From Perkinsus chesapeaki ATCC PRA-425 (Eukaryota; Protista; Perkinsozoa), in contig JAAPAO010000227.1 in the NCBI GenBank assembly GCA_013115145.1, forward strand, positions 1 through 49,942: a stretch of DNA of 49,942 bases, written 5' to 3'. Position numbers and translations under genes: made by a program. Below the pieces are notes generated by a model. It made no database searches. It was given only the letters and a program-made list of their open reading frames with translations, and was not told the origin of the DNA. Below, in pieces: positions 10,801 through 46,647 of the stretch; position 1 is the first letter of the stretch; each line of letters starts with the position of its first letter.

Positions 10801-11062
10801 TCTGGATCGAATCCCACAAAGATTACTTTCTTTTCCTCCAATTCAGCACGTTCCTTCACTGATAGTGTGCCCATGAACCTATAACCATATTTCATTTGCC
10901 CGTACCAACCCCTACTAGCTACCCTTCCTCTCCCTCTTCTTCATCACCCGACGAAGCGTCATGCTTATCATCAGGCTCCTCGGGTGAATCATCTTTAGGC
11001 CTCCAGTTAGATGACTTCTCGTGGCTCTTACTGCGACTTCGTCTGTCGTTCTTCTTTCCCAT
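7830..11062 (-). CDS. Multi-exon protein with three U1/matrin-type C2H2 zinc fingers, a charged N-terminus and Pro-rich linkers
   Basis: Spliced fingers: WYYCRLCSKK...LETHIGSK|LHAQR; WWCELCN...LEAHLLGQKHQKN; LICQLCC...GQFK|KHCESKDHLKH. The start is MGKKNDRRSRSKSHEK. The 3' end is tentative. Confidence 0.7.
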
Positions 11063-11372
11063 TTATAAAGCAATCAATAACTGATAGCAGCTATTGAGCA
11101 CAATGCTAGTTTTTGACCGCAATTTTCGCTCGTACTGTAGCGTAAACCCACTCGACATTTTCAGCCCATAAGTTGGCCCTATTGTGCCATTCAGAGGATG
11201 AGGGGGAGTGAATAACGAATCCAACCGTGGGGGTCTATCAGAAACCACCACAAACACGAAAAAACATCGGAAGTGCAACCGGAATTTGCATTTGAGACCA
11301 CTTCGCTCCGCTGCAAAACTGTGACATGTTCTGCGTTTTTATTCTGAGCAGCGCGTGTTGCTGAGACTTGGA

Positions 11373-13643: not shown

Positions 13644-14131
13644 CCTTATGGACCATTGTGTGACGTTTCCCTCTACATCGACTTGAGTATTAACACAATT
13701 GTGCGTTTGTGATTGCAGCACTCCTCCGCTAGCGTAATTCTGTTTTGCGGAGTGTGGCTCGGGAAAGGTCAGTTGATGCTACTGCATGCGCTCACGGGGA
13801 AGGGTTGTCGGATTGAAGATATTTTTACTATTGAAACAAATTGTAGACAGAACAGATTGTGTCATGCTCTTCAACACCCTGGACGTGATTCTGCAATCAA
13901 TGCTCTCAAACCCGTTGCATCTCATCCAGCAATCATTAACGGGCGTCCGCGTAACAAACTGCGCTTTTGCCCTCCACAATAGCGTCTTTTGAAACACTCC
14001 AACGCTAGCTGGTCTCTGATGCTTTTATGATAAGCTAGTAGACACCGTACCACAATTTGTTCCTCGAGGGAGCTGGTTGATCGTGGCTAGGAGTTTTCCA
14101 GGCTTTCATCTGCCATCACATCTCTCTTAAC

Positions 14132-26854: not shown

Positions 26855-27230
26855 AGCGAGAATAATGCCCAGTGGTGATTGTGATGTATACGTTCGTTTT
26901 CAGCTTACTCCTCTTATTATTAGCTGTTAATGTGGCAACAACAATATGGTTTTCTAGCCACGAATGCTTGTAGTTGTCATATACTTTGCCTGGGGGATAT
27001 AAAGTGAAACGTTGGTCTCGCGAGATTCGCCAGTTCAACGGGTATAAACTTGCATGGCATCTTGGGTGGTGTAAAAGATATTTGCTGTTAAAAACAACTG
27101 CTACCAAAGTGTGTGACCAGACAACATCGCTTTATCCCTATGCAACTTTCACGGGAACTAACAGCGTTATTCCCTATGAAAGCGGATCAAGAATAATAAT
27201 ATCAGACTAATATTATCAGTATAGTAGCCT

Positions 27231-30200
27231 ATGTCGTCGCAAGTTTCACCGATACGGGATACTAGCGAAACGAACGAGCAACAACAGACTGCTTCCAAGG
27301 AGAAGCAGAAGGCTCCGTTGGTTCCGTTATTGTCATTATTTCGATTCACCTCATTTACTGAGAAACTCCTTCTAGGTAACTGCGACCAGCGGTCTCGGGA
27401 CGCACTTGCTGTCGTAGGTCTGGCGATTTTGTGCTCTATCGGCCATGGCATCGCAATGCCACTTTTTGCGTTTGTATTCGGTGACATCGTGGGTGAGTGG
27501 TCTGTCTATAATGATGAGCTTATTAGCTTCGTTCAGACACTGTAGGAGATCCAAACGATCCGGACATCATGGATGTTATTGTTAAGCAAAGTCTATGGAT
27601 GGTAAGCCGTGCTGCGCTGTTGCGAATCAATGAACCCAAATCTTCAAAGTCATCACAGACCTCCGCCCACAAGGCTCTCGCGGTTGAGGCTCTGGTGTCT
27701 CTTAGTCAAGTCCTTTCAACACGTCCGTAGCTTAAGTCCAACCGTTTTGCATATGGCGGCCATACTGTGGCCGCGTGCGCATATCTGAACGTTGCCCTCC
27801 TTCTCGCTCCTGTTGAATGAGCGTTCAGGGATATATTGGTATCGGTACCACGGTAGTGGGAGGCATCTGGCATGGTATCCTGACGTATCTTGCTGCTAGC
27901 CAAGCTAACAAGATGAGAGTAGCATATCTTGAGGCCGGTAGGTTAGACTTATACAACTCATAATCATAATGATCATCGTGCCGCTATTAGTCCTATCGTC
28001 TGACATTCGATACTTTGATGAGATATCACCTGCTGAGTTGCCAACAAGAATGACGGAAGATGTTGCGAAGGTGGGAAAGTGGCTTTATATTGGTAAATAG
28101 ACACTTAATCAATGTGTTCCTCAATTACAGTACGTAGGGTCGATGCGACCCTCGGTGCTGCTGAAACTCATGTCAACTCACAGTCAATGAAATTTGCTCT
28201 ATCACAATGGGTCGGTTCTGTCCAATGAAAAGATTCAAATTAGGCCCAGTTCCAAGTATCGCGCCCCATTTGTTGGGGAAGCAGCAGCAGCTCCTCCTCC
28301 TTGAAGAGCTCCTCAGGATTGGTATGTACGCTCCGCGTCTAGGTACAAGATGCTATAGGGTTCAAGATTGGGATGTGCCTTATGAACCTATCAATGTTTG
28401 TATTTGGCTTCGGCTTCGGTTTCTACCGGGGATGGAAGGTAAGCTGTGAAGCATCTTACATGTGCCGTTGCAATATATTACGGTAGATAACATTGGTCAT
28501 GTTGGCAGCCATGCCGGTTATCATAGCAACATCCGCATTGCTCGGCATTGTTATGGCGAGGGGAGTAGTGGAGACTCAGTCCTGGTATGCTAGAGCCGGT
28601 GCCGTTGCCGAAGAGGTAGGGAGCCCCCTAACCCTCATAGATCGACTGCTGTTATGAGCAGGTGTTGAGCTCTATACGAACTGTGACGATGTTTGGTACC
28701 CAGCAGCGGGAAAATGACCGCTACCGAGACTGCCTTACAGAGGCGAAGAAAGGTGAATCGGCTGAAGGCCGCCTGACTTATTGGTGCTCTTCAGGTGGCA
28801 TCAAAGCTGGTATGCAGAATGGCTTCGGAGTTGGCCTTGCATTCTGCTCCATGTACTGCACTTACGCACTTACGTTCTGGTAAGGCAAGGCTAGTGCCCA
28901 CCGGTACTACCGCATTCATAGGTATGGAGGGACTCTTGTAGAAGACGGTGAGACCAACGACTACACTGGAAATCCTTATAACGGTGGTGACGTTCTTGCT
29001 GTGTTCTTCTCTGTTATTATGGGTAAGACTACTAGTACTAGTCCTGTTCATCCCCACTCTGTTACTGTTGAACACTTCGTGCCTCCTTCAGCCACCTTTG
29101 GTCTAGGCCAAGCCATGCCACCAATTCAAACCTTTCAAGCCGGGAGGGCATCCGCCTATGCTATACATAAGCTCATTGATGATAATACCGCAAAGATTGA
29201 GACACGAATGAAACCTTCTGGAGGTTGGCTCGATTACAGATGCTGCGCTTCAGTTGACTATGGTTGTGATGACAGGTTCTTCGGCATCAGTTACCCATGA
29301 TGAACAACTGAAGCTGGAGTCACTTGCCCTGGATAGTGTTACCTTCAGCTACCCTACTCGACCAGAGGTTACTGTTCTTAAGGAAGTCTCACTGATTATC
29401 AAGCCGGGTACGAAGGTCGCTATAGTGGGAGAGAGCGGCTCTGGCAAGAGTAAGATAGCATCAGTTGCATTGTGGTGATGTGAGTGTCGAGGTACGGTGA
29501 TATCTTTATTGGAGAGGTTCTATGATCCAACCTCGGGAAGAGTACTGGTGAATGGCGAAGATGTGAAGGACTTGCCCGGTGGGGCACTGGCTCTGAGGAA
29601 GCTGTTTGGGTGACTACTGAGGTGTAGAGTAGAGGAGAGGTGATCCGGTGCAGATACGTTGGCCAGGAGCCTGTGCTCTTTGCTGCGAGTGTAAGAGACA
29701 ATCTCACGTATGGTCTGGATTACACTCCCACGGATGAAGAGATAAAGTCAGCATGCAAGAGAGCTAATGTAGGGTTTATGATATCCTTGAATATAATATT
29801 GTTATTATTGTTGTTGTTTTAAAAGGTACATTCATTTATATCATCCTTACCAGATGGTTATAATACATATTGTGGAAGTTCTAGTGGTGGTGGTAGTCAA
29901 ATATCTGGTGGACAAAAACAACGTGTAGCAATAGCAAGAGCATTATTAAGAAATCCACAAGTAATTATTATAATATAGTATTATTGATAATTATCATTAT
30001 TTGAGATATTATTGCTGGATGAGGCAACATCTGCTTTGGATAATGAAAGTGAAAAGCTAGTACAAGGCACCCTAGATGAGTAGTAGCTGCCGCATTCTCG
30101 GACACTGCCACCGTGGCTAAGGCTTCATGATCAGATTACAGGACTCCACCAACCTCACTACAATCTCCATAGCCCATCGGCTCTCCACGGTTAGGAACTC

Positions 30201-33200
30201 AGACGTTATATTTGTTATGCATGAAGGTAGACTGGTAGAGCAAGGAAAGCACGAGGAGCTTATCAGTAAGGAGGACCGATAAGCCCAGTTGTAGTTGATC
30301 GGCTCCGTAGACCGTCCAGCTGGGGTCTACCGTAGCTTAGTGTCATCTCAAGAAGCGGCGGCTTCGATGTCCAGCCCAACCACTGAGGGCAGGTAAGGTG
30401 AGAGGACCTTGCTAAGGCAGCAGTGTCGTGTTAAGGGAAACTGAGAAGGCTCCAAGCACTCCTAGTGAAAGCGAAGTTGACGCCGAGATCACCGTAGCTG
30501 TCGAGCCTTACGAGAGTGAGGAGGCTAAAGAAAAGAAACGCATTGCAGCCGTTGCCAAGGCGTACAAGGTGGGCCTTCTCTTGGCCGCTATGCCTTAGTA
30601 CACCTAGTGTAGGTCCCATGGAGGAGACTGTTCGCCATCAACAAACCTGAGTGTGGTTACTTCATACCAGCTATGATTGGATCTGCTATGTTTGGCACTG
30701 TTATGCCCATGGAAGGCTTCTTATTGGCTAGGGCCATGAAAGCCTTCTATGACCCCGACCCGACTAAGCTTATGGAGGGTGTCCAATGGGCTGCTATAGG
30801 GTACCTCTTATCCGAGGCCTTCCCTCTCATCAAGTGCCTCAGGTATACATTGGTCGCTTTTGGAGCCCTTTTTGGTGCAGCACTGCAATTCTCTTACTTC
30901 GCTGTTATCGGGGAGAACCTTACAATGCGAATTCGTCAGCTTATCTTTGCCAAGTTCTTGAAGCAGGTAAAGCTCCCGAAGCTTAAACGGCAGCACCATC
31001 GAGGTCGTTCATATGTTTCAGGATATCGCTTATTTCGATGATCCCGATCATTCCACAGGCAAGCTCACGTCATCTCTGTCATCCTATGCACTTAAGATGA
31101 ACAGCATTACGGGGATACAACTAGGTGGGAGTGTCCTGCAGTCAGGGGATCAACTTCACGGTGTCATCGTCAGGTGTCTTCTGCCAGTTTGCTGCATCTA
31201 TCATATCGGGGTTGATTATAGCTTTCAGTGCTGACGTTAAACTATCACTTGTGATGATGGCATGCTTACCAGCTATGGCTGGAGCTGGTAGGTTTATCTC
31301 TTCGGGAATGGCAGCAGCTCTGTATATAAAGTGTACGGGCTGGAACGGTTATATTCTACTATATATTCAAACCTTCACTACATTGCTGGCCACCATGGGC
31401 CTACCTGCATAGGCTCACCTTTTCACGACTATGATTCGAGGAGCTCCAAGGGAGAGGAATATTGCCAGTCTGTCGCGGCTAGCTGCTGTCTGACAGTGGA
31501 TCCCTACTGTTTTCAGGAGCCATACAGATGGCGGTGATGATGGGAGTTGACAACGCCTCGGAGAAGGGTGGTGCGAGGCAAGCCGCACAATTGGCATCGG
31601 AAGCTATCCAGAACATGAAGACTGTTAGAGCGTTGATCGCTGAGCAGGCGACGCGCGACACGTAAACATCGCCGTAGTGGCGTCTACGCAAAGACTATTT
31701 TGGATAGATACCAGGAGTTATTGAGCAAATCATTTGGAGCTCAGAAAAAGGCATCCTCGATCTCCGGCTTCTGGTTCGGTGCCTCTAATGGCTTGATGTT
31801 TGGTGGTATGGCTCTGGGCTTCTGGTAAGGCTATGATCACCTGTCGCATACAAAACAGATGATGCATGAAGTCACTATAAAAAGTTCACTGACTTAAATT
31901 TTGATCCAGCCCCCCCACTGAAATAAGTTGGTTGAGCTCGGTCTTATTTGTGTCAGCGGGACATGATCCTTAGCATTTGATTCCTCATGTATCAGGTATG
32001 GTGGTAAACTAATTATTGAAGAAGGTTTGCCCTTTGATAAGATGATACAGTCTCTTATGGGAGTCTTCCTTTGTGCCATGGCTGCTGGACAGGTGAACCA
32101 GCCGCGCCGTGGGACCATTTTACAACCTCTGAGTCGATTTCAGTCGATGGCCTTCCTTGGGGACGTAGATGCTGCCAAGGCAGCGGCTCACGATGTTTTT
32201 GAGCTGTTGGACTCCGAGGTCTCTATCACATCAGCACCCTCTACGAAGTCGAACAATGTCAGTGAAGGTGTTTTTACGCTCTGGGACTTCTTCATTCAGG
32301 GCTTTAACGAAGGCGTGCGGATCAAATTCGACGGCGTCTCATTCAGCTACCCGCATCGTAAAGGAGTTAAGGTATCATCGTCGCTGTACAGTGAAACATA
32401 GCGTATCGCTGCCCAAAAGGTTTTGGATGGTCTGACGTTCGAGGTCGAGCCGGGGCAGACCGTAGCCCTTGTTGGACCGAGTGGCGGAGGAAAATCAACA
32501 GTCTTTGCCCTACTGCAGAGATTCTATGATCCCAACGAAGGCCAGGTCCGGTTTCATGCGAGCGGTTCCTCCCTTATCTCTCAGTCTAGGTGTACGTGGG
32601 GTCGTCTGGCACTAAGCTGACCGAGACGGAGCTTGACAAATGGAGAGGGACGATAGGCTTTGTTTCCCAAGAACCCGTCCTATTTGACTTGTCTCTTGAA
32701 GAGAATGTTCGCTACGGGTGGGTTGGACTACCTAAGCTTTTCCGCCGTCATTAGCTCGTTTATCCGCTCACTTTGTACCGCTTACTGCTCAGCGCCCCTC
32801 CAGTGAGCACTGACGAGCTTCATGAAGTATGTAGTCGTGCTGGAATGGATGACTTTGCGGGGACCAAGGTTGCTTGGAATGCCCAGCTGGGCCCTAGAGG
32901 AGGACTACTCTCAGGGGGCCAGAAGCAAAGGGTGGCTATTGCTCGAGCACTAATAAGACACCCTAAGTAACAGCGAGGCTCGTACTCATGCCCATCACGA
33001 ATGCTTCCTCTCCCTTCAGATTGGTGATGCTAGATGAAGCTACCTCGGCCTTGGACTCCGCATCGGAGGCGATTGTCCAGAAAGCGATCGACAATTTCGT
33101 GACTGCTCGGTCAGATGCAAACGGTGAACATGTTATGGCTGCACACTTGGCATGGGTTCCTGCCAGATAAGCCCACCACACTTATAATCGCCCATCGGCT

Positions 33201-33330
33201 ATCGACGGTCCAGAATGCTGATAAGATACTCGTGCTCTCTGGTGGGAAGCTTGTTGAAAGTGGCACTCACAATGAGCTGATGTCGAAGCAAAGCGTGTAT
33301 CATGGTCTATATACGAAGGGAACATTGTGA
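27231..33330 (+). CDS. ABCB1: Full-length ABCB/MDR (P-glycoprotein-like) transporter A, TMD-NBD-TMD-NBD, many short introns
   Basis: [75 protein letters not shown]. The junctions checked stay in frame. Confidence 0.95.
29735..30050 (+). repeat. AT-rich homogenised NBD1 tract, copy A
   Basis: The 135-nt exon 29826-29960 is identical to 35952-36086 and 43438-43572, and the flanking introns are homologous. Confidence 0.9.
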
Positions 33331-33784
33331 AAATGGGCAATTGGGAAGTTGACTAAGTGCCAGAGTTTTTTAACGTGTCATGTATTCCACGTACAGTGTA
33401 TGTTACTGCAGCTTTGACTTTGTGGCGATCCGAGTTGATCAATTTTATTGAACTGTCAACGTGGGCTGCTGCCTTGTAATCGATATGCGTTTCGGGTATA
33501 AATCACATGATAACTGTATGCTCTTCCTCTCGAAAGAGGCGCAAGGGGTCCTATCCTCCTAGTGGTGCAGGTTCCTAAAATAGCGCCGCTATGAGGCCAT
33601 ACGACCGTTTGGATTGGGAAACCGATGAAACGGTCGCATTTCTCTACCAGCTAGCGTGGCGGGATTGAAGCACCCCTGGTTGCGTCAGCACAGTGTGTAC
33701 GCACAGCGCGGGTCGATGAGCCGGCACGGAATCTGTCGGATGCCAGATTCATACTCTACCTCCTTAGGCCATTGCATTATCCTA

Positions 33785-36700
33785 ATGAACGGTGAATCAT
33801 CAGCTACAATATCTACTGTGGGAACTGACGACGTTGTCGCAGAGACCTCATCTCGACCAGCTACCTCTCCTACTAACAAGAAGAAGAAGATTGTTTCTTA
33901 CTTCAAGCTTTTTCGGTTTGCAACTGGTCCGCAATTAGGTGCAGTCAGTAAGCACAACGCGTTCGGGTGTATTACTCTGTAGTTTGTCTCCCTTAGTTGT
34001 TGCGGTGTTGGCCGCGGCGCTGCACGGTTTGGCGATGCCCATGTTCGCTTACATCTTCGGTGATCTCGTTGGTGGGTTATAAATGAATAACCCTCCTGAG
34101 TCTTTATGTTCATTCAGACGTCCTCGGTAACCCTCAAGGTACCGAATTCATGGATGAGATTTCCAAGAGATGTCTCTATCTCGTAAGTTTCGTGACCTCT
34201 CCACCGTGATTTCTATCGTTTAGGTTTATGTTGGCCTTGGGGCGTTGGTTATGGCTGGCATTTGGCACGGTCTCCTAACGTTTACAGCCCAGAGACAAGC
34301 AACTACTATGCGCAGGGCTTATTTTGAAGCCGGTAGCTCATCGTCAAGTTAATTTGGTCATTGTACATATGTCTATCAGTTCTCTCCCATGACGTTGCTT
34401 GGTTCGATACGATATCTCCGGCCGAGCTGCCTACTAGAATGACGGAGGACGTTGCTAAAGTATCATGGAAGCTGCCAATCTCGTGGATCGTTGATGCCCT
34501 TGTTCAGGTCCAGAACGCCATAGGGTTCAAATTAGGTGTCTTCACTATGAATTTTTCAATGTTCATTTTCGGCTATGTATTAGGATTTATAAGAGGCTGG
34601 AAGGTCAGCTTGGAATTAGGGGAAGTTTGGTAGCTAAATCCATTAGGTTTGTCTCGTAGCCATTGCAGCCATGCCAGTAGTAATCGCCGCATCGGCGATA
34701 CTCGGTCACGCTATGGCGCAGTCTGCTAATGAATCGCAAACGTGGTATGCTAGGGCTGGCGCAGTTGCCGAAGAGGTGATCTGGAGAAGTTAAATAGTGC
34801 TTATGTTGGTGACAGGTCCTTAGCTCAATTCGTACAGTAACTATGATGGGTACGCAAAAACGTGAAGTTGAAAGATATGGCAAATCCTTGGAGGAAGCTC
34901 GTAAAGGTAACCTTTTATTTGGAAAGATATTCTATATTATGTGAGTAGGTGGAACCAGATTGGGTTGCCAAGCTGGACTTGGTCTTGGTCTTACTTTCGG
35001 TGCCATTTACGGTTCCTATGCCCTCACTTTTTGGTAAGCTAATAACACGGCGTGACCTGAGCATGCACCTTCCTCCTCAGGTATGGTGGCACATTGGTGC
35101 GTGATGGTGTTTTCAATGACTTTACCGATAAGCCCTACAATGGTGGTGATGTTCTCACCATCTTCTTCTCCTTGATCATGGGTCAGTCCTTTGCTGCTCT
35201 TTATCAGCATTACCCGTCTTTCTCCTAGGCACATTCGGACTGGGTCAAGCCCTCGCGCCTATGCAAGCTTTTCATATCGGCCGCTCGTCAGCAACAGATA
35301 TCCAGGCACTCATCGACGATAAGAGCAGCGTGGTGGAGCCTCCTATGCCCCCGAGGAGCTCGGATGGTGATTGGCCCTTCTATAGCCCATCTGCATTCGT
35401 CCTTTGCAGGCTCGCTCGTGATGCCTTACTCGATCCCAAAGATGCAGACCATGACTCTGAAAAATGTGTGCTTCACTTATCCCTCCCGACCGGACGTCCA
35501 AGTTCTCAAGAATGTCTCACTGCAAATCGAAATTGGCAAGAAAGTTGCCTTTGTTGGAGAGAGTGGATCTGGGAAAAGTGAGATGTGACGATGTCTACTT
35601 ATCCCTATTAGTCTTTCAGGCACTATCGTCGGGTTGCTAGAGAGGTTTTATGACCCTACAACCGGCACAGTGCTTTTAAACGGTGAGGATATTAGAGAGT
35701 TAGATGGCAGTCCACAGTGTATCCGTTCCATATTTGGGTGAGGTTGTTCATTGGTGGTCGAGAGAGCATAGACATTACTATTAGGTACGTTGGACAGGAA
35801 CCTATCCTTTTTGCAGCCTCCATTAAGGAAAATCTGTCTTATGGTCTGCCGTACACACCCACTGATGAAGAGATAAAGTCAGCATGCAAGAGAGCTAATG
35901 TAGGGTTTTGTGATATCCTTAAATATAATATTGTTATTATTGTTTTATAAGGTACATTCATTTATATCATCCTTACCAGATGGTTATAATACATATTGTG
36001 GAAGTTCTAGTGGTGGTGGTAGTCAAATATCTGGTGGACAAAAACAACGTGTAGCAATAGCAAGAGCATTATTAAGAAATCCACAAGTAATTATTATAAT
36101 ATACTATTATTAATAATTATTATTATTAAAGATATTATTACTGGATGAGGCAACATCTGCTCTCGATAATGAGAGTGAACTTATGGTACAGGAGACTATT
36201 GACAGGTAGATTTTATTCCGCTCCCCGCGCGATAAGTATCGGTTCCTCCCTTATCTTCCAGCCTCCAGCGTTCATCTCAATTGACAACCATCTCAATCGC
36301 ACATCGCCTTTCCACTATCCGCAACTCTGATGTGATCTTTGTCATGCAATCCGGATGCCTGATGGAGCAGGGCTCTCATGATGAGCTTATCGGTACGAAC
36401 GTGCTTGCTGTGGAGGAGGAGGCCTTGATGCTACATTTGTTTGATCAGCGAATCCTAAGGGTGTGTACAGCACACTGGTAGCTGCTCAGCATGCTGCTGC
36501 CACTAAAGGAAATAACAGGAGTGCTCGCCCTAGTCTCGTTCGTCAAGAGTAAGTGGGCACAGGTTCGATTCTCGGTGAAAACATTATTTTGTTCAGTTCC
36601 AATGCCAGCTCAAGCGCAGCGAGCCAATGTAGATGGTCTTTATTGATTAACCTAGGGAGCTAAGTTATTTCAGCCAATGGTGAGACAGCTATGGTCGTTG

Positions 36701-39259
36701 ACACCCGTACGGAGAAGGAGGTTGAGAGGGAACGTATAGAGAAGATCGCCAAGTCCTACAAGGTGGGGCCTGAAACGTCGGAAGACTGTTGTGTTCCTTG
36801 TCCCCCCCCCTTTTTGCCATTGGGAATTACCATTGGTATAATCAGGTCCCTTGGAGACGCTTACTGGCTCTATCCAAGCCAGAGTTTGGCTTCTATGTGC
36901 CAGCACTTCTGGGTGCTGTCATCTTTGGTTGTGTTATGCCGTTTGAAGGGTTCCTTCTCTCACGCTCGATGAGAGCATTTTACAAGACGGACCCAGATGA
37001 GATGATGGATGGTGTGACTCTGGCTAGTATTGGGTAATCATAGCTCAACCAATAGCCATTACGTCTTCCTGTCAGATATGTCATCCTCGGCGTCGCCTGC
37101 CTGGCGAGTGCATTCGTTCAAATGGGTGGGTTTGCCTATATCGGGGAGCACCTCACCAAGCGCGTCCGAAGTCTCTGTTTCACTAAGTTCCTCGAACAAG
37201 TGAGTTCACATTTTCAAAGGATCCTCCCCATGACTCCGCAGGATATGGCTTTCTTTGATGATCCCAAGCATTCGCCTGGTCGCTTAACAGCAGCGCTTGG
37301 CACATACGCTCTGAAGATGAATGCCATTAGTGGCGTCCAATTGGGTAAAAATTGCATCTTTATACTCAAGTGAAAATGATTTTAGCTTTAATGCTCTTCC
37401 TCTGCAGGTGCATACGTTCAACTTACAGCATCTCTCATTGCCGGACTCACCATTGCTTTCTTTGGGACATGGAAACTAACTCTGGTGATGATCGCAGTTC
37501 TTCCTTTGATGGCTGCAGCAGGTAGCTTTAGCATAGTTTTTTTCATCGCACGTGGCAGATTGGTGTAATTTAGGTGGCATTCAAATGGCGGTATTGCTCG
37601 GCATGGACAAGAACAAGAGTGCTGATTCCCTAGCGGCCAATCAGGTTGCGTCGGATGCGGTTCAAAACATTCGAACTATTCGTGCACTGGTCTCGGAGCA
37701 ATGGACACGCAATCTGTACGGAGGAGGTTTCTACGCTCTACTAACGTTGCTTGTTCAGGTTTCAAGATCTCCTCAAGCGTGCTGTTCCACAACAGGCACG
37801 GACGTCTAGCTGGGCTGCGTTATGGTATGGTATCTCGCAGGGCATTTTGTTCTTCAGTGTTGCTCTGGGATTCTGGTAAGTCCGTATCCACCCGCACAGT
37901 TCCACTACCGGTCTTCGCAAATCTCTGTTGATAAAGGTACGGTTCAAAATTGGTGCAAGATGAAGGTCTGACATTTGATAAAATGATACAATCTCTGATG
38001 GGTGTATTTCTTGCTGGTCTCGCAGCTGGTCAAGCTCTGGCCTTCGTTGGGGATATCAGCGAAGCGAAGGCAGCTGCCCACGATGTTTTCGAGCTGCTTG
38101 ACAGTGAGAGTTCCATTAACCCATCGAGTGAGAGTGGTAGAAGATACAGCGTCTGGGGACCACAAGTGAGCTGTCATCCCTTTTGTAGAGTTCATTACGT
38201 CAACCTCGATTAGGGCACATCTGCGCCTGCGGCGGTCAACATTAAGTTTAAGGATGTGGAGTTCTCGTATCCTCATCGTCCTGGTGCCAAGGTGGGGTTC
38301 AAGAGTCAGGAGTGGCTAGCGGTACAGCTCTTGGTGCATAGATTCTTTGCGGTTTAAGTTTTGAGATCGAGGCCGGCAAGACTGTGGCCTTAGTCGGTCC
38401 GAGCGGCGGAGGGAAGTCCACTGTGTTTGCTCTGCTGCAGAGGTTTTATGACCCAACTAGTGGAGAAGTAACATCTCCTTTCTTGGCTTTCTTGGCGTTA
38501 TGCGCATGCGTTCTTCCTCAGATACTTGTAGAGCCGGCTCAAGCTCGATTGGATGATATGAATGTTGCCTGGTGGAGAGAACAAATAGGTTTCGTTTCCC
38601 AAGAACCTGTACTGTTCGACCTCACCCTCGAGGAGAATGTCAGATATGGGTAACTGTCTGTGATTCTCCTATCATTAACATTCCTACTGCCTTATCAGTG
38701 CTCCTCCTATTGAACGTCCTGAGATGCTTTCTATTTGCGCTCGAGCTGGTATGAATGACTTTGCTGGCAGTAAAGTCGCATGGGATGTTGGTCTTGGTCC
38801 ACGTGGTGGGTTGTTGTCTGGAGGCCAAAAACAAAGAGTGGCCATTGCTCGAGCACTTATGCGACATCCAAGGTGAAATCTCATGGTACGCCGAATAAAC
38901 GCACCACATTTTCGAATCAGATTGCTTATGCTTGATGAGGCAACATCCGCTCTAGATTCGACATCAGAAGCCGTTGTCCAAAAAGCTATCGATGAGCTTA
39001 CCACTAAGAGAAGCTCTTCAACTGATGGTAGGTCTCGTTCTGAAATTTCGAGGTACACTATCTGGCGACGGTATTATTGTCAGGTGTGGCTGGAGTGAAG
39101 CCGACAACAATCGTCATAGCTCATCGTCTATCAACAGTCCATAACGCTGATTTAATCTTAGTAATTGCTAAAGGCCGTCTAGTTGAACAAGGAACACACA
39201 CTGAGTTGATGGAGAAGGAAGGAGTTTATTATGATTTACACCAGAAGGGCAGTCTGTGA
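33785..39259 (+). CDS. ABCB1: Full-length ABCB/MDR transporter B
   Basis: Same motif series as transporter A, with both Walker A and both signature motifs intact. The junctions checked are in frame. Confidence 0.95.
35865..36200 (+). repeat. AT-rich homogenised NBD1 tract, copy B
   Basis: Exon 35952-36086 is identical across A, B and C. Intron 36087-36131 is identical to 43573-43617. Confidence 0.9.
38550..38874 (+). repeat. NBD2 tract near-identical to 45943-46267
   Basis: 325 nt at a constant offset of 7393 with one mismatch seen, including an identical intron. The ORF track gives identical 60-aa translations at 38572 and 45965. Confidence 0.9.
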
Positions 39260-39730
39260 TCATTCTCCCTCTTTGTTGCAAATAAACAAAAGTTGTATAA
39301 TCGCTATGAGCTACTCTAAAGCATTTGTGACTACTTTTTTCATTATTGTGTCATATCATGTGTGACGAAAAGCAGCCTGTTGAGTTCACTCATGGCCGGT
39401 GTATAAGGTGAGTTACCTTAGGTAGCTACACTTTCATTAAAAGGAAGAGGCATCACCTCATCTGGAATGCGTGACCAGCAATTCCGTAACATTTCTGACA
39501 AACACAAAGCGCCTTGCCGTTATATGTGAAGCTATCTACTCGGTCACTGCTAACTAGGTAGCAAGGAATCACCCCTGGCGCCGACCCCGATATCTGTTAA
39601 CGATTTTCGATACACTAAGGCCATGAAGTAGATGGCGTGATGATATTATGTGACAAAGATGCTGCTGAACCCTTCCTAATAAAAAAAGGAATTATCACAT
39701 CAGGCACAGCTAGACGAAGTCCTTAAAGTT

Positions 39731-40129
39731 TCAGTGAGCCTTCTCATATATCCGTGGTTTCTTGTCTAAATAAACGACAGTGAGTTGTGTCATCTTCTTA
39801 TTCACCTTGACTTTGTTAAACGTTTTGTTACCAATTTTCTTAGGGTACTTCTTCATTAACGGCTCAAGGTCACCCTCGTCGAAGATGAACTTCATAGTGC
39901 CGTTTTTGTACTGGTAATCGGTGAAGTAGATGTTCTTATTAGTGTCCGCCAATGCGGCATAGCCAAGGGCAACATCTATATCAATCTCAATGATGACAAA
40001 GTCAGTTTCACTTGGACTTTTGAGCGGTAAGAATGTGCCCGATGGTTGCTTTTGACCCAAAGCCATATAGAGCAGCAGCATCATAACCAACATCAGTGAG
40101 CTCGCGCTCAGAGGGGCGTGAGTTGACAT
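39731..40129 (-). CDS. Intronless small secreted orphan (132 aa) with a P-x-G-T-[FY] motif after the signal peptide
   Basis: Hydrophobic LMLVMMLLLYMALG followed by QKQPSGTF, in an uninterrupted ORF. Confidence 0.75.
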   Translation of the reverse strand: MSTHAPLSASSLMLVMMLLLYMALGQKQPSGTFLPLKSPSETDFVIIEIDIDVALGYAALADTNKNIYFTDYQYKNGTMKFIFDEGDLEPLMKKYPKKIGNKTFNKVKVNKKMTQLTVVYLDKKPRIYEKAH

Positions 40130-41240
40130 GTTATAACACAGCGCGAGACCAACCTTATTTTCAAATTAGCCAGTGACACGCGCATTTTCACAGTGGGGCT
40201 GCAACCTGATACGTCACTAGACAGGGCATCACATCAGAGGCACATACAGGAACATCAGAAGCAATGTTCTCAGAAGGAATGCATTCCATGTATCATATCG
40301 ATATAGTAATATATTTACTGAGAAAGTTACCATTAAATCTACACATGAGGAACACTTTGTGTGCCTCGAGGAACCCAATCGTATGGCGCTCGATGAGCCT
40401 CTCCATCATATGGCGCTATTGTACTCCCAGTCTACTACGCTGAATATCATGATCCATTGGCCGCTGACTGCCACAGTCGCGAATTCCAGCTCCTGAGTGA
40501 AGTAGAATACTCTCAAAAACTGCTTTTTTAGAAGGGCGGGCTCTTCCTCTGCTGTCGTGTAGAAGCAGGGAACACGATTAATGCATGTGCGTGGAGGGGA
40601 CCTGCTCCACTCCCATAAGGACCGGGCAGCGGGCTGGCAATAACAATTGGCCAATTTAATGCAGGATTCAACGGCAGGGGTGAACCCTAGTGGTGTCCAA
40701 CAGTCCTGTGATTGCTCCAGCACATCCTTGGCACTCCAGGAAATGTTAAGTTATGTCGTTCGCAATTCTGAAGGAAGCCTACGATGGATCTTCAACTATC
40801 ATAACTTCCCTACCATGCCCTTTACAAGATCGACTGCAGCGCCTTGTTGTTAAGCTTTATAACAAGACACTCTCTCCCTGATTTCAACATGCCTTGGAGC
40901 GACGAGACGAAGAAAGCCAGACCGCGCTAGCCATGAGGCTGAGCGTCACGCCGAGACGCCTCCGGACCCCAGAGATGTCTCACCATGCCGTCTCTGAGTT
41001 TACCCACACGCTGGCTCTGCATTTGCCGTATCTCCGGTTTTGATCGCATAATACAGCACACTTAAGGCTTGTTATATTACCCTTGTCATTCTCTTTAAAT
41101 TTTTCACCTATCAAGTAGTATTCCGATGATTGGTAACCTGTGCTCCAATAGACGTATCCGGTAGAGCAGTTGGGCAAGAATCTGAGCTTGAAGCGCGCTT
41201 AACTCACCCTTCTCCAAAATGTTCAGTTAATTTTTGTTAT

Positions 41241-44200
41241 ATGTTAGCATCATCAGCTTCGGCGGTAGAATCCTCCGTCGGAGATTATCTAGATGTAGCG
41301 GATGACCGGCCGCTTGCTCCCGGTTTACAAGAAAAGCCTTCTGCAAGGCGGTTAGTTCCCTTTCACCAGTTATTCCGTTTCGCAACAAAGTCCCAACTTC
41401 TAAAAATAAGTACCGCCTCTACATAAAGTAGCACTCTTCTATCATCGTCAATCCTTCAGTTGCTGCCTTAGCATCGGCTGTGATACACGGCCTGGCGATG
41501 CCACTGTTTGCGTTTGTGTTCGGTGACCTTGTGGGTAGGAACTGAACTGGAATGACATTGTACTCTCTTCGTGGTCAGATGTTCTAGGAGCAGGGGATGC
41601 CGACTTTGTTGATGAAGTGTCTAAGCGTTGCCTCCATATGGTATAACTGTTGTCCAGTTAAGCCTGTATTCCGACAGTCAGGTTTACATAGGACTTGGTG
41701 CTCTTGTGTTTGCATTTGTATGGCATTCGATATTGACATCAACCTCGCACAGCCAAGCAACCACTATGCGAGTTAGATACTTTGAAGCTGGTAAGATATG
41801 CGATGCACTACCGAGAGATCACCTTGCGCTGCTCAGTGTTGTCTCGGGATGTCGCTTGGTTTGATAAGGTGTCGCCTGCAGAGCTACCAACGCGAATCAC
41901 CGAAGATGTTGCCAAGGTAACTTCGACGGTGCCCCGCCTTGGTACGAGGTAACCAAGTAGCTAAGAGCGGTTTCCCAGGTACAGAATGCCATCGGCTTCA
42001 AGCTTGGCGTTTGTCTAGTGAACTCATCTATGTTCATCTTTGGTTATGCCATGGCCTTCGTGAGGGGTTGGGAAGTGGGTGGTATATCTCTGCACGTCGA
42101 CACTGATTGAGGCTCCTTCAGGTGTCCCTCATCGCGACAGCTTCAATGCCCATCGTCATCGGAGCATCCGCAGTCCTCGGGTATGCCATGGCTCAGTCGG
42201 CAAACGAGTCTCAGTCTTGGTACGCTCGAGCTGGTGCTGTTGCTGAAGAGGTATGTTTCCATGTTATTGACCTCGGTCTTCGAAGCTCCTCCGATGGGGC
42301 AGGTATTGAGCTCGATTCGCACGGTTACAATGATGGGCACACAGCGACGTGAAATTGAGAGATATGCAAGTAAATTAGAAGAAGCAAGGAAAGGTAGCCT
42401 TTGGTTCAACTGTCTGCAATATTCTCTCGTCTAGGCGGTACCAAACTAGGCCTTCAGTCGGGCTTGGGACTTGGCCTTACCTACGGCGCAGTGTACGGTG
42501 CTTATGCTATAACATTCTGGTAAATTATCTTAGTAAAGTTATTGTGACACTTTTATAAGGTACGGAGGCACACTTGTACGTGATGCGGTAATTAATGACT
42601 TCACGGGCAAGCCATATACTGGAGGAGACGTCCTGTCTGTTTTCTTCTCCCTTATCATGGGTATCGATCAAAGGCCCAACTACGGTATTCTGTCTGCCTC
42701 TTGTCAGGTACCTTTGGGCTTGGCCAAGCTCTCCCGCCTTTACAAGCATTCCAAATTGGCCGGGCGGCGGCTACTGATATTCACGAGGCTATAGATGAGG
42801 CGTCCGATACCATAGAGCAGCCCATACCTGCTGAGAGCCCCGACGGTGGGTCTACAGCGGGTGAACCTGATTCATACCCCCTTGCCAGGTCACCCCGTCA
42901 TTGACTATGGAGTCCCCAAGATGGAGAGCATACAACTGGAAAACGTCTTCTTCGCCTACCCCTCTCGCCCTGAAATTCAAGTCCTTAAAGGCGTATCGCT
43001 CGAGATAAAGATTGGCATGAAAGTTGCCTTTGTTGGAGAGAGTGGCTCAGGAAAGAGTATGTATGAGTATGCAGTGCTCTCTGTGATGGCTTATCCTTCC
43101 ATGTACAATCGTTGGGCTTCTCGAACGGTTCTATGATCCAGCGATGGGTAGAGTATTACTGAATGGAGAAGACATTCGCGAGATTGATGGAAGTCCTCAG
43201 TCTATAAGATCTATCTTTGGGTGATTTAGCGAGTTGTTTTAGCATAGGTGGCTGATGTCCTTTTCAGCTATGTTGGTCAAGAACCGATTCTATTTGCCGC
43301 GAGTATTAAGGAGAATCTCACGTATGGTCTGCCGTACACTCCCACTGACGAAGAGATAAAGTCAGCATGCAAGAGAGCTAATGTAGGGTTTTGTGATATC
43401 CTTAAATATAATATTGTTATTGTTGTTGTTTTATAAGGTACATTCATTTATATCATCCTTACCAGATGGTTATAATACATATTGTGGAAGTTCTAGTGGT
43501 GGTGGTAGTCAAATATCTGGTGGACAAAAACAACGTGTAGCAATAGCAAGAGCATTATTAAGAAATCCACAAGTAATTATTATAATATACTATTATTAAT
43601 AATTATTATTATTAAAGATATTATTACTGGATGAGGCAACATCTGCTTTGGATAATGAAAGTGAACTTATGGTACAGGAGACTATTGATGAGTAACCACC
43701 TTCTCTTTTTCCACTGCTAGCGCTAAATGCTTCTTAGTAATTTCTCCTCAGACTTCAGAAGACGACAGGCCTCACTACCATATCCATAGCTCATCGCCTA
43801 TCGACAATCCGCAACTCAGATGTTATTTTCGTTCTACAAGCTGGCTCTCTCGTTGAGCAAGGCACACATGAGGAACTGTTGAGTAAGCTATTCTATCACA
43901 TCATCGTGGTTGACCACTGATTCTTGCAGGGAATCCGGGAGGGCGATACTCCAATCTCATTGCGGCCCAGCAAGTGAACGTTGGTGAGCGAAGGAAGAGC
44001 GACCCGCGACCTAGTCTGCAAAGGCAAGAGTAAGGAATTCACTATAGGACTTAGCTCCCTTCATTCTGAGTTCTATTTAGATCTGACCCTGCTGATCCAA
44101 AAGCTGTAGAATGTAGGTTGCCCACATTTCTTTGTCACCATGAGGCGAATCCTTCAGTGATCAAGCCTCAAGTCACTATGAAAGCGGAAAAGACCGAGAG

Positions 44201-46647
44201 GGAGATAGAGCGCGCAAGGATCGAGAAAATTGCTAAGAACTATCGAGTAGCGATGTCAAGCGAGATTGTGCTACAAAGTGGCAATCATTCAGGTTCCATG
44301 GGGAAGAATACTCCGTTTGTCCAAGCCCGAATGGTCATACTATATACCAGCACTGTTTGGAGCTATCATCTCCGGATGCATTATGCCATTCAACGCTTTT
44401 GTACTGTCACGTGCCCTCAAGGCATTTTACAACAAGGACGTAGACGACATGATGAATGGTGTGTCCTTGGCATCGATCGGGTTGGTTACTCAACGTTTAT
44501 ACCTCTCCTAGATGTCCCGTAGTTTCGTTATCTTGGCGACGGCTGCTTTGGTCGGCGGCATCCTTCAGACTGGCGCCTTCTCTTTCATCGGAGAGCACCT
44601 CACGAAGCGTATCAGGCGGCTTTGCTTCACCAAATTCTTGGAGCAAGTAACTACGGTCGTTCGTACCTGCATCTCAACGCGTTCATCAGGACATGGCTTT
44701 CTTTGACGACCCCAACCACTCCTCTGGTAGACTCACTGCCGCCCTCAGCACTTATGCCTTGAAGATGAACTCTATAAGCGGCGTGCAACTCGGTACCGAC
44801 ATCGCTCCTGGATGTTATTTAATCGTCTCTCCACAGGCGCATATTGCCAGTTTGTAGCATCGCTGGTATCGGGTCTGATTATTTCATTTCTCGGTTCCTG
44901 GAAATTATCTTTGGTAATGGTTGCAGTTTTGCCGTTAATGGCAGGCGCAGGTAGTCCTTCAGTCTTCTTTGATACTTGCCTCATACTTTGCTGATAGGTG
45001 CGATACAGATGGCAGCTGGTCTTGGAATGGACAAGAATAAGACGTCCGACTCCCTCGCAGCGAATCAGATAGCATCTGACGCTGTACAGAACATCCGCAC
45101 TATTCGTGCGCTGGTCTCCGAACAATGGACGAGAAACACGTAGCAGGAGCATTTATAGCCTACTCCGAACGCCGACTGTATAATAGGTTTGCTGATTTAC
45201 AAAGACATGCAAGCCCTCGTCAAATTCGAGCATCTTTATGGGCAGGGTTCTGGTACGGCGTTTCACAAGGAGTCCTCATGTTCTTCAGCATTGCACTGGG
45301 GATGTGGTGGGTATTCGATGCGTATCTGCGGCCCTGCCAACTGGTTTCGGGTTGCTCAGGTACGGCGCCACTCTTGTCGAGGATGACGGTTTACAATTCC
45401 ATGAGATGATTCAATCTCTTATGGGTGTTTTCCTGGCAGCCATGGCGGCCGGCCAAGCTCTGGCTTTCCTCGGAGATGTTAAAGAAGCCAAAGCTGCGGC
45501 GCACGATGTTTTTAAGCTGCTCGACAGTGAGAGCACCATCAACCCCTCGAGCAATTTAGGCAGACGGTCTAGCATTTGGGGACCGCAGGTGAGCTACGCT
45601 TTAATGCTCTCATTTCCCATTATTCTGTCAGGGGACTAAATCACCAGAGGCCATCGGCATCACTTTCAAGGACGTTGAGTTCTCTTATCCCCAGCGACCG
45701 GATGCTCAAGTAAACAAACCGCTATTATGGTCACTATCCTGGCTGCAGATCCTTCAAGGGCTCAGCTTCCGCATCGAGCCAGGGCAGACAGTAGCTCTGG
45801 TTGGCCCTAGCGGTGGCGGCAAGTCTACGGTGTTTGCTCTTCTGCAAAGATTTTACGATCCTACTGGAGGAAGTGTAAGCACCGGCGTCGCGAGGATGAT
45901 GAAGCTCTTCCTAGATTCTGGTGGAAGAGTCTGATACTAAACTGGATGATATGAATGTTGCCTGGTGGAGAGAACAAATAGGTTTCGTTTCCCAAGAACC
46001 TGTACTGTTCGACCTCACCCTCGAGGAGAATGTCAGATATGGGTAACTGTCTGTGATTCTCCTATCATTAACATTCCTACTGCCTTATCAGTGCTCCTCC
46101 TATTGAACGTCCTGAGATGCTTTCTATTTGCGCTCGAGCTGGTATGAATGACTTTGCTGGCAGTAAAGTCGCATGGGATGTTGGTCTTGGTCCACGTGGT
46201 GGGTTGTTGTCTGGAGGCCAAAAACAAAGAGTGGCCATTGCTCGAGCACTCATGCGACATCCAAGGTAAACAGAGAGGTCTTCTGCAAGATCTGTTCCTT
46301 TCGCCTCACTCGTATCATGTTCAATTCAGGCTGCTGCTCCTTGATGAAGCCACTTCAGCGTTGGATTCAGCATCTGAGGCAGTTGTGCAGAAAGCTCTCG
46401 ATGATCTGGCGATTAGCAGCCGCTCTCGTAGGACGCTGGTGGCGCCCAAGCCTTGTCTCATTTCGTACTCTCAGGCCAGCAGAGTAAACCAACAACACTC
46501 ATCATAGCTCATCGTCTATCAACAGTCCATGACGCTGATCTAATTTTAGTAATTGCCGGTGGTCGACTAGTTGAACAAGGAACACACACTGAGTTGATTG
46601 AGAAGGAAGGAGTTTATTATGATTTGCACCAGAAGGGCAATTTATAA
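41241..46647 (+). CDS. ABCB1: Full-length ABCB/MDR transporter C, with one non-canonical acceptor (CAT) at 43100-43102
   Basis: All motifs are present and colinear with A and B. The frame is preserved only if intron 43057-43102 (GT..AT) is removed. Confidence 0.9.
43350..43690 (+). repeat. AT-rich homogenised NBD1 tract, copy C
   Basis: Exon 43438-43572 is identical across A, B and C. Confidence 0.9.
45943..46267 (+). repeat. NBD2 tract near-identical to 38550-38874
   Basis: See the partner tract at 38550-38874. Confidence 0.9.

What the first reader, a model, noticed from the sequence alone, without database searches (positions are those of the whole stretch)
29735..43690. An AT-rich ABC-signature cassette is identical in all three otherwise diverged transporters
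The 135-nt exon [45 protein letters not shown] is base-for-base identical at 29826, 35952 and 43438. 44 of its 45 codons end in A/T, whereas neighbouring exons use mixed third positions. The downstream 45-nt intron has only 3 G/C in B and C (identical) and 6 in A, and the upstream intron is also homologous and AT-rich. Other orthologous introns do not align. This points to repeated gene conversion of an island of about 300 bp with foreign composition. It may have been imported from an AT-rich donor locus, or driven AT-ward by a homology-dependent mutation or conversion bias. It resembles a shared, exchangeable motor module.
Basis: partly seen in the sequence, partly recalled or inferred. Interest (0 to 1): 0.78.

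Follow-up and report, generated by a model that had tools for sequence, protein, structure and literature searches.

The report
AT-saturated gene-conversion tract in transporter genes
Three neighbouring drug-pump-type transporter genes of the clam parasite Perkinsus chesapeaki keep about 320 bases identical by copying from one another, and in that stretch nearly every freely variable base has become A or T, the opposite of what such copying usually does.

Summary
The window (Perkinsus chesapeaki) holds three tandem 33-exon ABCB (P-glycoprotein-type) genes whose silent sites are otherwise saturated (third-position identity 0.25-0.45). The 135-nt exon 15 is identical in all three, with GC3 0.02 against 0.45-0.49 gene-wide. 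The two flanking introns have GC 0.07-0.24, against an intron mean of 0.42-0.48.

The tract is a mosaic of several interparalogue gene-conversion events. It is not foreign DNA. A wholly AT-rich paralogue exists on contig C3090 and shares at least 22 intron positions. It shows no excess silent-site similarity to the cassette, and the cassette is more AT-rich than it.

Conversion tracts in two other ABCB tandem pairs (contigs C2818 and C1950) are also AT-shifted: GC3 0.13-0.35 against 0.45-0.49. Ten other ABC domains are GC-normal at the same motif.

Best reading: recurrent conversion coupled to an AT-ward repair or mutation bias, the reverse of GC-biased gene conversion. A repeat-triggered (RIP-like) process is not excluded.

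This scan already noted the same phenomenon on other DNA of this genome (s1-234949, s1-225874, s1-232681), so this locus is a further, clean three-copy case that includes introns.

The parts
27085..33327 (+). Gene A, an ABCB full transporter. My model has 33 exons; the first exon is uncertain.
   Evidence: Spliced alignment guided by P0047, no stop codons; ABC motifs.
33782..39256 (+). Gene B, an ABCB full transporter with 33 exons.
   Evidence: Spliced alignment guided by P0047, no stop codons.
41241..46644 (+). Gene C, an ABCB full transporter with 33 exons. It equals the annotated protein P0047 (Perkinsus chesapeaki).
   Evidence: The model reproduces P0047 exactly. P0047 carries Pfam PF00664 and PF00005.
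29736..30053 (+). NBD1 conversion tract, copy A. It runs from the end of exon 14 (A's 15th exon) through an intron, the cassette exon and a second intron into the start of the next exon.
   Evidence: List of differences; identity profile.
35867..36202 (+). NBD1 conversion tract, copy B. The stretch 35940-36161 is exactly identical to C.
43350..43688 (+). NBD1 conversion tract, copy C.
29826..29960 (+). Cassette exon (NBD1 signature motif), copy A, GC3 0.02.
   Evidence: PF00005 match.
35952..36086 (+). Cassette exon, copy B.
43438..43572 (+). Cassette exon, copy C.
43383..43437 (+). AT-rich upstream intron 14 of C, GC 0.24. The homologous introns are A 29769-29825 and B 35900-35951.
43573..43617 (+). 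AT-rich downstream intron 15 of C, GC 0.07. The homologous introns are A 29961-30005 (GC 0.13) and B 36087-36131 (GC 0.07).
38550..38857 (+). Second tract, shared by B and C only: NBD2 exons 30-31 plus intron 30, 308 nt identical. This is the B copy.
   Evidence: GC3 is 0.34, against 0.41-0.60 in A's homologous exons.
45943..46250 (+). Second tract, C copy.
39098..39251 (+). Third tract, shared by B and C only (last exon, 90% identical). This is the B copy; the C copy is 46486-46639.
   Evidence: family D4; residues 1254-1278: third-position identity 0.80, GC3 0.16-0.20.

Best explanation
Three ancient tandem ABCB (P-glycoprotein-type) genes of Perkinsus chesapeaki repeatedly overwrite one another by short-tract interparalogue gene conversion. 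The tract covers the most conserved part of nucleotide-binding domain 1: the end of exon 14, the signature-motif exon 15 and the start of exon 16, together with both introns.

The process that keeps the tract identical also pushes it towards A/T. The cause is either heteroduplex repair that favours A/T or repair-associated GC-to-AT mutation that then spreads to all copies. Every position free to vary, meaning codon third positions and intron bases, has therefore gone to A or T, while the encoded peptide is held by selection.

Shown: the conversion, its recurrence, the AT shift in both exon and introns, and the same association in two other ABCB arrays. Inferred: that the AT shift is a consequence of conversion, and its molecular cause.
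For: Conversion. Identity is 95-100% over about 320 nt, against 50-65% elsewhere. Third-position identity elsewhere is 0.25-0.45, which is saturation. The introns are included. At the edges A=C and B=C patterns alternate, which implies several events with different partners and end points. A quick tree gives (D,(A,(B,(C, P. olseni P0121)))) with SH-aLRT 100 for the C+P0121 and D+A+B+C nodes and 88 for A+(B,C). The A/B/C duplications therefore predate the species split, yet the tract is identical within P. chesapeaki.

AT shift at neutral sites, not codon selection. Exon 15 has GC3 0.02. The tract's introns have GC 0.07-0.24, against a mean of 0.42-0.48. GC at codon positions 1 and 2 is unchanged, 0.51 against 0.50.

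The association is general in this gene family. GC3 in converted against unconverted codons is:
- B-C: 0.27 against 0.48 (p=5e-8)
- A-C: 0.16 against 0.51 (p=5e-10)
- E1-E2 on C2818: 0.13 against 0.46 (p=5e-10)
- F1-F2 on C1950: 0.35 against 0.45 (p=9e-4)

Control. In ten other ABC domains of the same genome, GC3 around the signature motif is 0.35-0.62.

Differences within the tract. At the six sites where A and B=C differ by a G/C-versus-A/T change, all are transitions. In 5 of the 6 the more actively homogenised pair, B=C, carries the A/T.
Against: Some converted tracts of the F pair have normal GC3 (0.49-0.55), so conversion alone does not make DNA AT-rich at once.

The B-C-only tracts show only a modest shift relative to A: 38 sites against 19, and Fisher p=0.07 against the background asymmetry.

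The reverse causality, in which AT-rich DNA attracts conversion, is not excluded.

CpG is depleted in the tracts more than overall base composition predicts: o/e 0.51 against 0.76, with TpG/CpA raised. That fits a deamination-type mutation better than a pure repair bias.
Confidence: 0.6

Rival explanations
1. A repeat-triggered mutation process, like RIP or MIP. The cell recognises the short identical repeats and deaminates or methylates their cytosines. Selection removes the damaging changes, and conversion re-homogenises the copies, which keeps the trigger in place. The same process at larger scale would make the AT-rich gene islands such as contig C3090.
For: AT enrichment is confined to the identical stretch and affects exon and introns alike. 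In converted tracts of all three arrays CpG o/e is 0.50-0.53, against 0.70-0.82 elsewhere, and TpG/CpA is raised. The AT-rich paralogue D has a similar CpG o/e of 0.48. The G/C-versus-A/T differences between copies within the tract are all transitions. The genome has at least one cytosine-5 DNA-methylase domain, at C138:655-1557.
Against: The Neurospora-type RIP indices are not met. (CpA+TpG)/(ApC+GpT) is 1.1-1.4 in the tract, so CpA is not depleted. The copies remain identical instead of diverging. The exact repeats are only 155-308 nt long. Third-position C is also lost outside CpG, falling from 0.27 to 0.16. The methylase hit was not characterised and may be a tRNA methylase. RIP is known only from fungi (my own knowledge).
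Confidence: 0.15
2. Import. The cassette was copied by ectopic conversion from an AT-rich paralogue or AT-rich genome compartment, such as the ABCB gene D on contig C3090, and then spread among A, B and C.
For: A wholly AT-rich ABCB paralogue exists (contig GC 0.31, GC3 0.17). It shares at least 22 intron positions and phases with A/B/C, including the two that flank the cassette, and it has the same lengthened Gly/Ser loop before the signature motif. Its exon is 79-80% identical in nucleotides and 86% in amino acids to the cassette.
Against: At codons that encode the same amino acid and have several A/T-ending options, cassette and D match in 54%. Cassette against E1 gives 45% and D against E1 gives 50%, both pairs being independent AT-rich tracts (p=0.5). 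The flanking introns of D are not homologous to those of the tract. The cassette's GC3 of 0.02 is lower than D's 0.17 (p=0.002). No closer copy exists in the 41.7-Mb assembly. The E and F arrays show the same shift, and no other AT-rich ABCB gene turned up (their tracts were not themselves searched genome-wide).
Confidence: 0.13
3. Selection for an AT-rich sequence at this spot. Possible targets are slow translation for folding of the nucleotide-binding domain, low mRNA structure, or a DNA or RNA element shared by the paralogues. In this reading conversion is incidental.
For: The same NBD1 signature to Walker B region is AT-rich in two independent arrays. The peptide is 44/45 conserved in P. 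olseni.
Against: The introns inside the tract are as AT-rich as the exon, which codon selection cannot explain. The F pair and ten other ABC genes are GC-normal at the same motif. AT-shifted tracts in the F pair lie at other positions: the Walker A region, the membrane domain and NBD2. There is no Rfam match in the window.
Confidence: 0.05
4. Assembly or polishing artefact. The three copies were made identical by consensus calling from mis-mapped reads.
For: Perfect identity of repeats is what polishing with multi-mapped reads can produce. No read data were available to me.
Against: Polishing cannot create about 320 nt of AT-rich near-identity in genes that are 50-65% identical around it. A still differs from B=C at about 12 substitutions and two indels inside the tract, so the copies were resolved. 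The same exon peptide appears in the independently assembled P. olseni orthologue. Tracts in the other arrays behave alike.
Confidence: 0.03

Closest known systems
Concerted evolution of tandem paralogues by short-tract interparalogue (ectopic) gene conversion
   Same: There is a sharply bounded identical stretch in otherwise saturated paralogues. It includes introns, its breakpoints form a mosaic, and the paralogues are older than the species split.
   Different: Neutral sites in the tract are almost purely A/T. In the families usually cited, such as mammalian histones and Hsp70 (my own knowledge), converted tracts are GC-enriched.
GC-biased gene conversion (gBGC)
   Same: The composition shift is confined to recombining or converted DNA, it acts on coding and non-coding sites alike, and it is independent of codon selection.
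   Different: The direction is reversed: GC3 is 0.02-0.35 in tracts against 0.45-0.51 outside. There is also extra CpG loss, which gBGC does not predict.
AT-biased gene conversion discussed for plastid and yeast mitochondrial genomes (mentioned in PMC4524490 and PMC7846184, found; I did not read them in full)
   Same: It is an AT-ward outcome of conversion or recombination.
   Different: Those cases are organellar genomes. This one involves nuclear, intron-bearing protein genes.
Repeat-induced point mutation (RIP) of fungi
   Same: AT enrichment is restricted to duplicated, identical DNA, differences between copies are transitions, and CpG is depleted.
   Different: CpA is not depleted and the RIP indices are normal. 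The repeats are only 155-308 nt long, the copies stay identical and coding, and the organism is a perkinsozoan alveolate.
ABCB1 / P-glycoprotein (MDR) full transporters
   Same: The architecture is TMD-NBD-TMD-NBD, with Walker A, signature and Walker B motifs in both halves. Named database hits outside Perkinsus include ABCB1, ABCB4 and ABCB11, at 35-40% identity.
   Different: The Gly/Ser loop before the NBD1 signature motif is lengthened by three residues, a feature shared only with paralogue D and the P. olseni orthologue. The substrates are unknown.

Membership tests
ABCB full-length transporter (P-glycoprotein/MDR type) | Two ABC_membrane (PF00664) and two ABC_tran (PF00005) domains in one chain | tested here: met
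   P0047 (gene C) carries PF00664 and PF00005. It has two signature motifs, at residues 537 and 1188. The cassette exon alone hits PF00005.
ABCB full-length transporter (P-glycoprotein/MDR type) | Walker A, signature (LSGGQ-type), Walker B and H-loop motifs in both halves | tested here: met
   All are seen in translations of A, B and C. Caveat: in gene C the annotated model skips the conserved segment just after Walker A of NBD1, because the intron 12 acceptor reads CAT.
ABCB full-length transporter (P-glycoprotein/MDR type) | ATP-driven export of substrates | not testable with these tools
   No functional data.
Interparalogue gene-conversion tract | Abrupt rise to near-identity against diverged, silent-site-saturated flanks | tested here: met
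Interparalogue gene-conversion tract | Identity extends over non-coding DNA (introns) | tested here: met
Interparalogue gene-conversion tract | Mosaic breakpoints or several events, and paralogues older than the identity | tested here: met
   Alternating A=C and B=C patterns. The tree places the P. olseni orthologue beside C, inside the A/B/C clade. A formal GENECONV/RDP test was not run.
GC-biased gene conversion | GC enrichment of converted DNA | tested here: not met
   Converted codons have lower GC3 in all three arrays.
RIP (repeat-induced point mutation) | CpA-to-TpA bias: a high TpA/ApT ratio and a low (CpA+TpG)/(ApC+GpT) ratio | tested here: not met
   The second index is 1.1-1.4 in the tract and 1.19 on C3090.
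RIP (repeat-induced point mutation) | A RID/Masc-type cytosine methyltransferase | tested here: inconclusive
   There is one PF00145 hit in the genome, at C138:655-1557 with 52.5 bits. Its subtype was not determined.
Cassette imported from an AT-rich donor locus | A donor whose silent sites are closer to the cassette than composition alone explains | tested here: not met
   54% of comparable codons match, against 45-50% in controls, p=0.5. No closer copy exists in the assembly.
Cassette imported from an AT-rich donor locus | Cassette composition equal to that of the donor compartment | tested here: not met
   GC3 is 0.02 in the cassette against 0.17 in the donor candidate, p=0.002.

The most novel reading that the evidence does not exclude
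Perkinsus chesapeaki may have a homology-dependent process that drives any short, repeatedly paired identical DNA towards A/T. It would be either a true AT-biased gene conversion or a RIP/MIP-like cytosine-deamination system. At larger scale the same process would make its sharp-edged AT-rich gene islands, such as the 20-kb contig C3090 with GC3 0.15-0.17. This would be the first such system described in nuclear genes outside fungi and the reverse of the widespread GC-biased conversion.
Probability: 0.2. Interest if true: 0.85.

Novelty: new variant of a known kind. Interest (0 to 1): 0.55.

Why it matters
Gene conversion between paralogues is ordinary. Where it leaves a compositional trace in nuclear genomes, that trace is normally GC enrichment. 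Here the trace is a near-total switch to A/T at neutral sites, in exons and introns alike. It recurs in three ABCB arrays, and according to earlier notes of this scan it also occurs in other gene families of this genome.

If the link is causal, it gives a natural system for studying an AT-ward repair or mutation bias. It may also explain how sharply bounded AT-rich gene islands arise in a genome of 47% GC.

In practice, such tracts distort gene trees, codon-usage statistics and horizontal-transfer screens in Perkinsus, a shellfish pathogen. The homogenised stretch lies in the ATPase core of candidate drug-efflux pumps.

Tried and rejected
- Foreign or imported cassette. I found the AT-rich paralogue D on C3090, but silent-site similarity, intron homology and composition tests gave no donor signal. 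tblastx found no synteny between C3090 and the window outside the ABCB gene.
- Neurospora-type RIP. The indices are not met.
- AT-richness as a property of the ABC signature motif. Ten other ABC domains rule this out.
- Codon-level selection. The AT-rich introns rule this out.
- An RNA element. Rfam found nothing at gathering threshold in the whole window.
- An orthologue of D in other Perkinsus species. The word search with P0135 found none closer than the window's own gene C.
A scan of metagenome contigs with P0047 found no relative.
- Literature. I found no paper on AT-shifted conversion tracts or gene conversion in Perkinsus.
- The large representative protein search was not used, because no claim here rests on absence of relatives.
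Database searches used protein ids returned by the tools, uninterrupted reading frames of fetched loci by reference or single exons by reference. My joined models of A, B, D, E1 and F2 were used only inside local scripts, for codon tables, the alignment and the tree.
Full report
**Organism and genes.** The window is contig C1380 of a 41.7-Mb assembly. Word searches returned proteins named Perkinsus chesapeaki that are 100% identical to frames of this genome. One of them, P0047, is encoded on a 49,942-base contig, which is this window. It is not human DNA.

The window carries three tandem, co-oriented ABCB (P-glycoprotein/MDR-type) full transporters:
- A: about 27085-33327
- B: 33782-39256
- C: 41241-46644

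My splice-aware aligner reproduced the annotated 1296-aa, 33-exon model P0047 for gene C exactly. It gave stop-free 33-exon models for A and B. Median intron length is 47-48 nt.

**Check of the observation.** The 135-nt exon is identical at 29826, 35952 and 43438.
- Its GC3 is 0.02, against 0.49, 0.45 and 0.46 for the whole genes. The chance of this is 3.6e-11.
- The downstream intron has 3 G/C in B and C and 6 in A. The upstream intron has GC 0.21-0.24. Other introns average 0.42-0.48.
- Exact identity runs 155 nt between A and B or C, and 222 nt between B and C. The near-identical tract is about 320 nt.
- Outside it, 100-nt windows are 50-65% identical and third-position identity is 0.25-0.45, which is saturation.

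B and C share a further 308-nt identical tract over NBD2 that includes an intron, and a 90% tract in the last exon.

**It is gene conversion, and it is repeated.** The identity covers introns. At both edges the pattern switches between A=C and B=C over a few tens of bases, which needs several events with different partners and end points.

A quick maximum-likelihood tree gives (D,(A,(B,(C, P. olseni P0121)))). SH-aLRT support is 100 for C+P0121, for B+(C,P0121) and for the D+A+B+C clade, and 88 for A+(B,C). The careful search was not finished. The A/B/C duplications are therefore older than the split between P. chesapeaki and P. olseni, yet the tract is identical within P. chesapeaki.

The P. 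olseni orthologue has the cassette peptide at 44/45 identity, including the unusual lengthened Gly/Ser loop. The 19 residues just upstream differ at 6 positions.

**The AT shift is regional and neutral, not codon selection.** Introns inside the tract are as AT-rich as the exon. GC at codon positions 1 and 2 is unchanged. The shift is graded: GC3 is 0.02 in the central exon and about 0.24-0.36 in the flanking parts of exons 14 and 16.

The motif itself is not AT-prone. In ten other ABC domains of the same genome, GC3 around the signature motif is 0.35-0.62.

**The same thing happens in the other ABCB arrays.** A search of the genome with the exon found a tandem pair on C2818 (E1, E2), a nearly intron-free pair on C1950 (F1, F2) and a single gene on C3090 (D).
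- E1 and E2 share a stretch of about 250 nt at 100% identity, running from the NBD1 signature motif to the H-loop, with GC3 0.04-0.12.
- F1 and F2 share at least eight tracts.

At codon level, GC3 in converted against unconverted codons is:
- B-C: 0.27 against 0.48
- A-C: 0.16 against 0.51
- E1-E2: 0.13 against 0.46
- F1-F2: 0.35 against 0.45 (Fisher p from 5e-10 to 9e-4 across the four)

Some F tracts are GC-normal (0.49-0.55), as expected for recent single events. The B-C-only tracts are only modestly shifted relative to A: 38 sites against 19, p=0.016 on its own and p=0.07 against the background asymmetry.

**The donor idea.** Contig C3090 (19,979 nt) has GC of about 0.31 throughout. Its ABCB gene D has GC3 0.17. 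A cyclophilin gene and an 832-aa frame on the same contig have GC3 0.15.

D shares at least 22 intron positions and phases with A/B/C, so it is an old resident paralogue and not a contaminant. It is the only AT-rich ABCB gene found.

Three results speak against D as donor:
- At same-amino-acid codons with several A/T options, the cassette matches D in 54%. The figures are 45% for cassette against E1 and 50% for D against E1 (p=0.5).
- The flanking introns are not homologous.
- The cassette is more AT-rich than D (p=0.002).

Import is therefore unsupported, although an ancient event cannot be excluded.

**Mutation signature.** CpG o/e is 0.50-0.53 in converted tracts of all three arrays, against 0.70-0.82 elsewhere. 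TpG/CpA is raised, and D shows the same. Third-position C is also lost outside CpG, falling from 0.27 to 0.16.

Neurospora-type RIP indices are normal. Inside the tract, all six sites where A and B=C differ by a G/C-versus-A/T change are transitions, and in 5 of the 6 B=C carries the A/T. One cytosine-5 methylase domain exists in the genome but was not characterised.

These data lean towards a deamination-type GC-to-AT input. They cannot separate biased repair, repair-associated mutagenesis and a repeat-triggered process.

**Comparison with what is known.** Interparalogue conversion is textbook. Its usual compositional trace is GC enrichment (my own knowledge). AT-biased conversion turned up in the library only for plastid and yeast mitochondrial genomes. 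I found no paper on this in Perkinsus.

Earlier notes of this scan describe the same phenomenon on other DNA of this genome:
- s1-234949, which I take to be the E pair and re-derived myself;
- s1-225874, another transporter family;
- s1-232681, SDR genes. That note states the shift is specific to this species and is not CpG damage. I could not test the first claim. My CpG counts only partly agree with the second.

Notes s1-226306 and s1-221449 report sharp-edged AT-rich gene islands. C3090 looks like one.

**Limits.**
- A metagenome scan found no relatives.
- No read data were available to me.
Searches used returned protein ids, uninterrupted reading frames of fetched loci by reference, or single exons by reference. 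My joined models were used only in local scripts.

Noticed in passing
G000 contig C3090 (loci L005 and L006), whole 19,979 nt: The whole contig has GC of about 0.31. Three genes on it have GC3 0.15-0.17: the ABCB paralogue D on the minus strand at about 10934-16400, a cyclophilin at 1357-1806, and an 832-aa frame with no Pfam match at 8191-10686. D shares at least 22 intron positions with A/B/C. This looks like one of the AT-rich gene islands that other readers of this genome have noted.
   Followed up: partly
window 43057-43102 (gene C, expected intron 12): Where A and B have a canonical intron ending in CAG, gene C reads CAT, with a T at 43102. The annotated model P0047 instead reads through and splices 43103-43151. 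This replaces the conserved segment just after the NBD1 Walker A motif (the LLERFYDP-type helix) with unrelated residues. The cause is a base error, non-canonical splicing or a damaged NBD1 in gene C.
   Followed up: partly
window 38550-38857 and 45943-46250; 39098-39251 and 46486-46639: There are two further conversion tracts shared by B and C only: NBD2 exons 30-31 with intron 30 at 100% identity, and the last exon at 90%. Their GC3 is only moderately lowered (0.16-0.44).
   Followed up: yes
G000 contig C1950 (L025), genes F1 and F2: This ABCB pair is nearly intron-free, with 4 exons each against 33 in the window's genes. It has at least eight separate conversion tracts. F1 groups with a P. 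marinus protein and F2 with a P. olseni protein, so this duplication is also older than the species.
   Followed up: partly
G000 contig C138:655-1557 (L028), minus strand: This is the only match to the cytosine-5 DNA methylase domain PF00145 in the genome (52.5 bits, with one in-frame TAG that probably marks an intron). Its subtype, DNA or tRNA methylase, was not determined.
   Followed up: no
window genes A and B: The word search with P0047 returned gene C's model but no separate P. chesapeaki proteins for genes A and B within 0.55-1.75 times its length. Their annotated models may be split, fused or missing.
   Followed up: no
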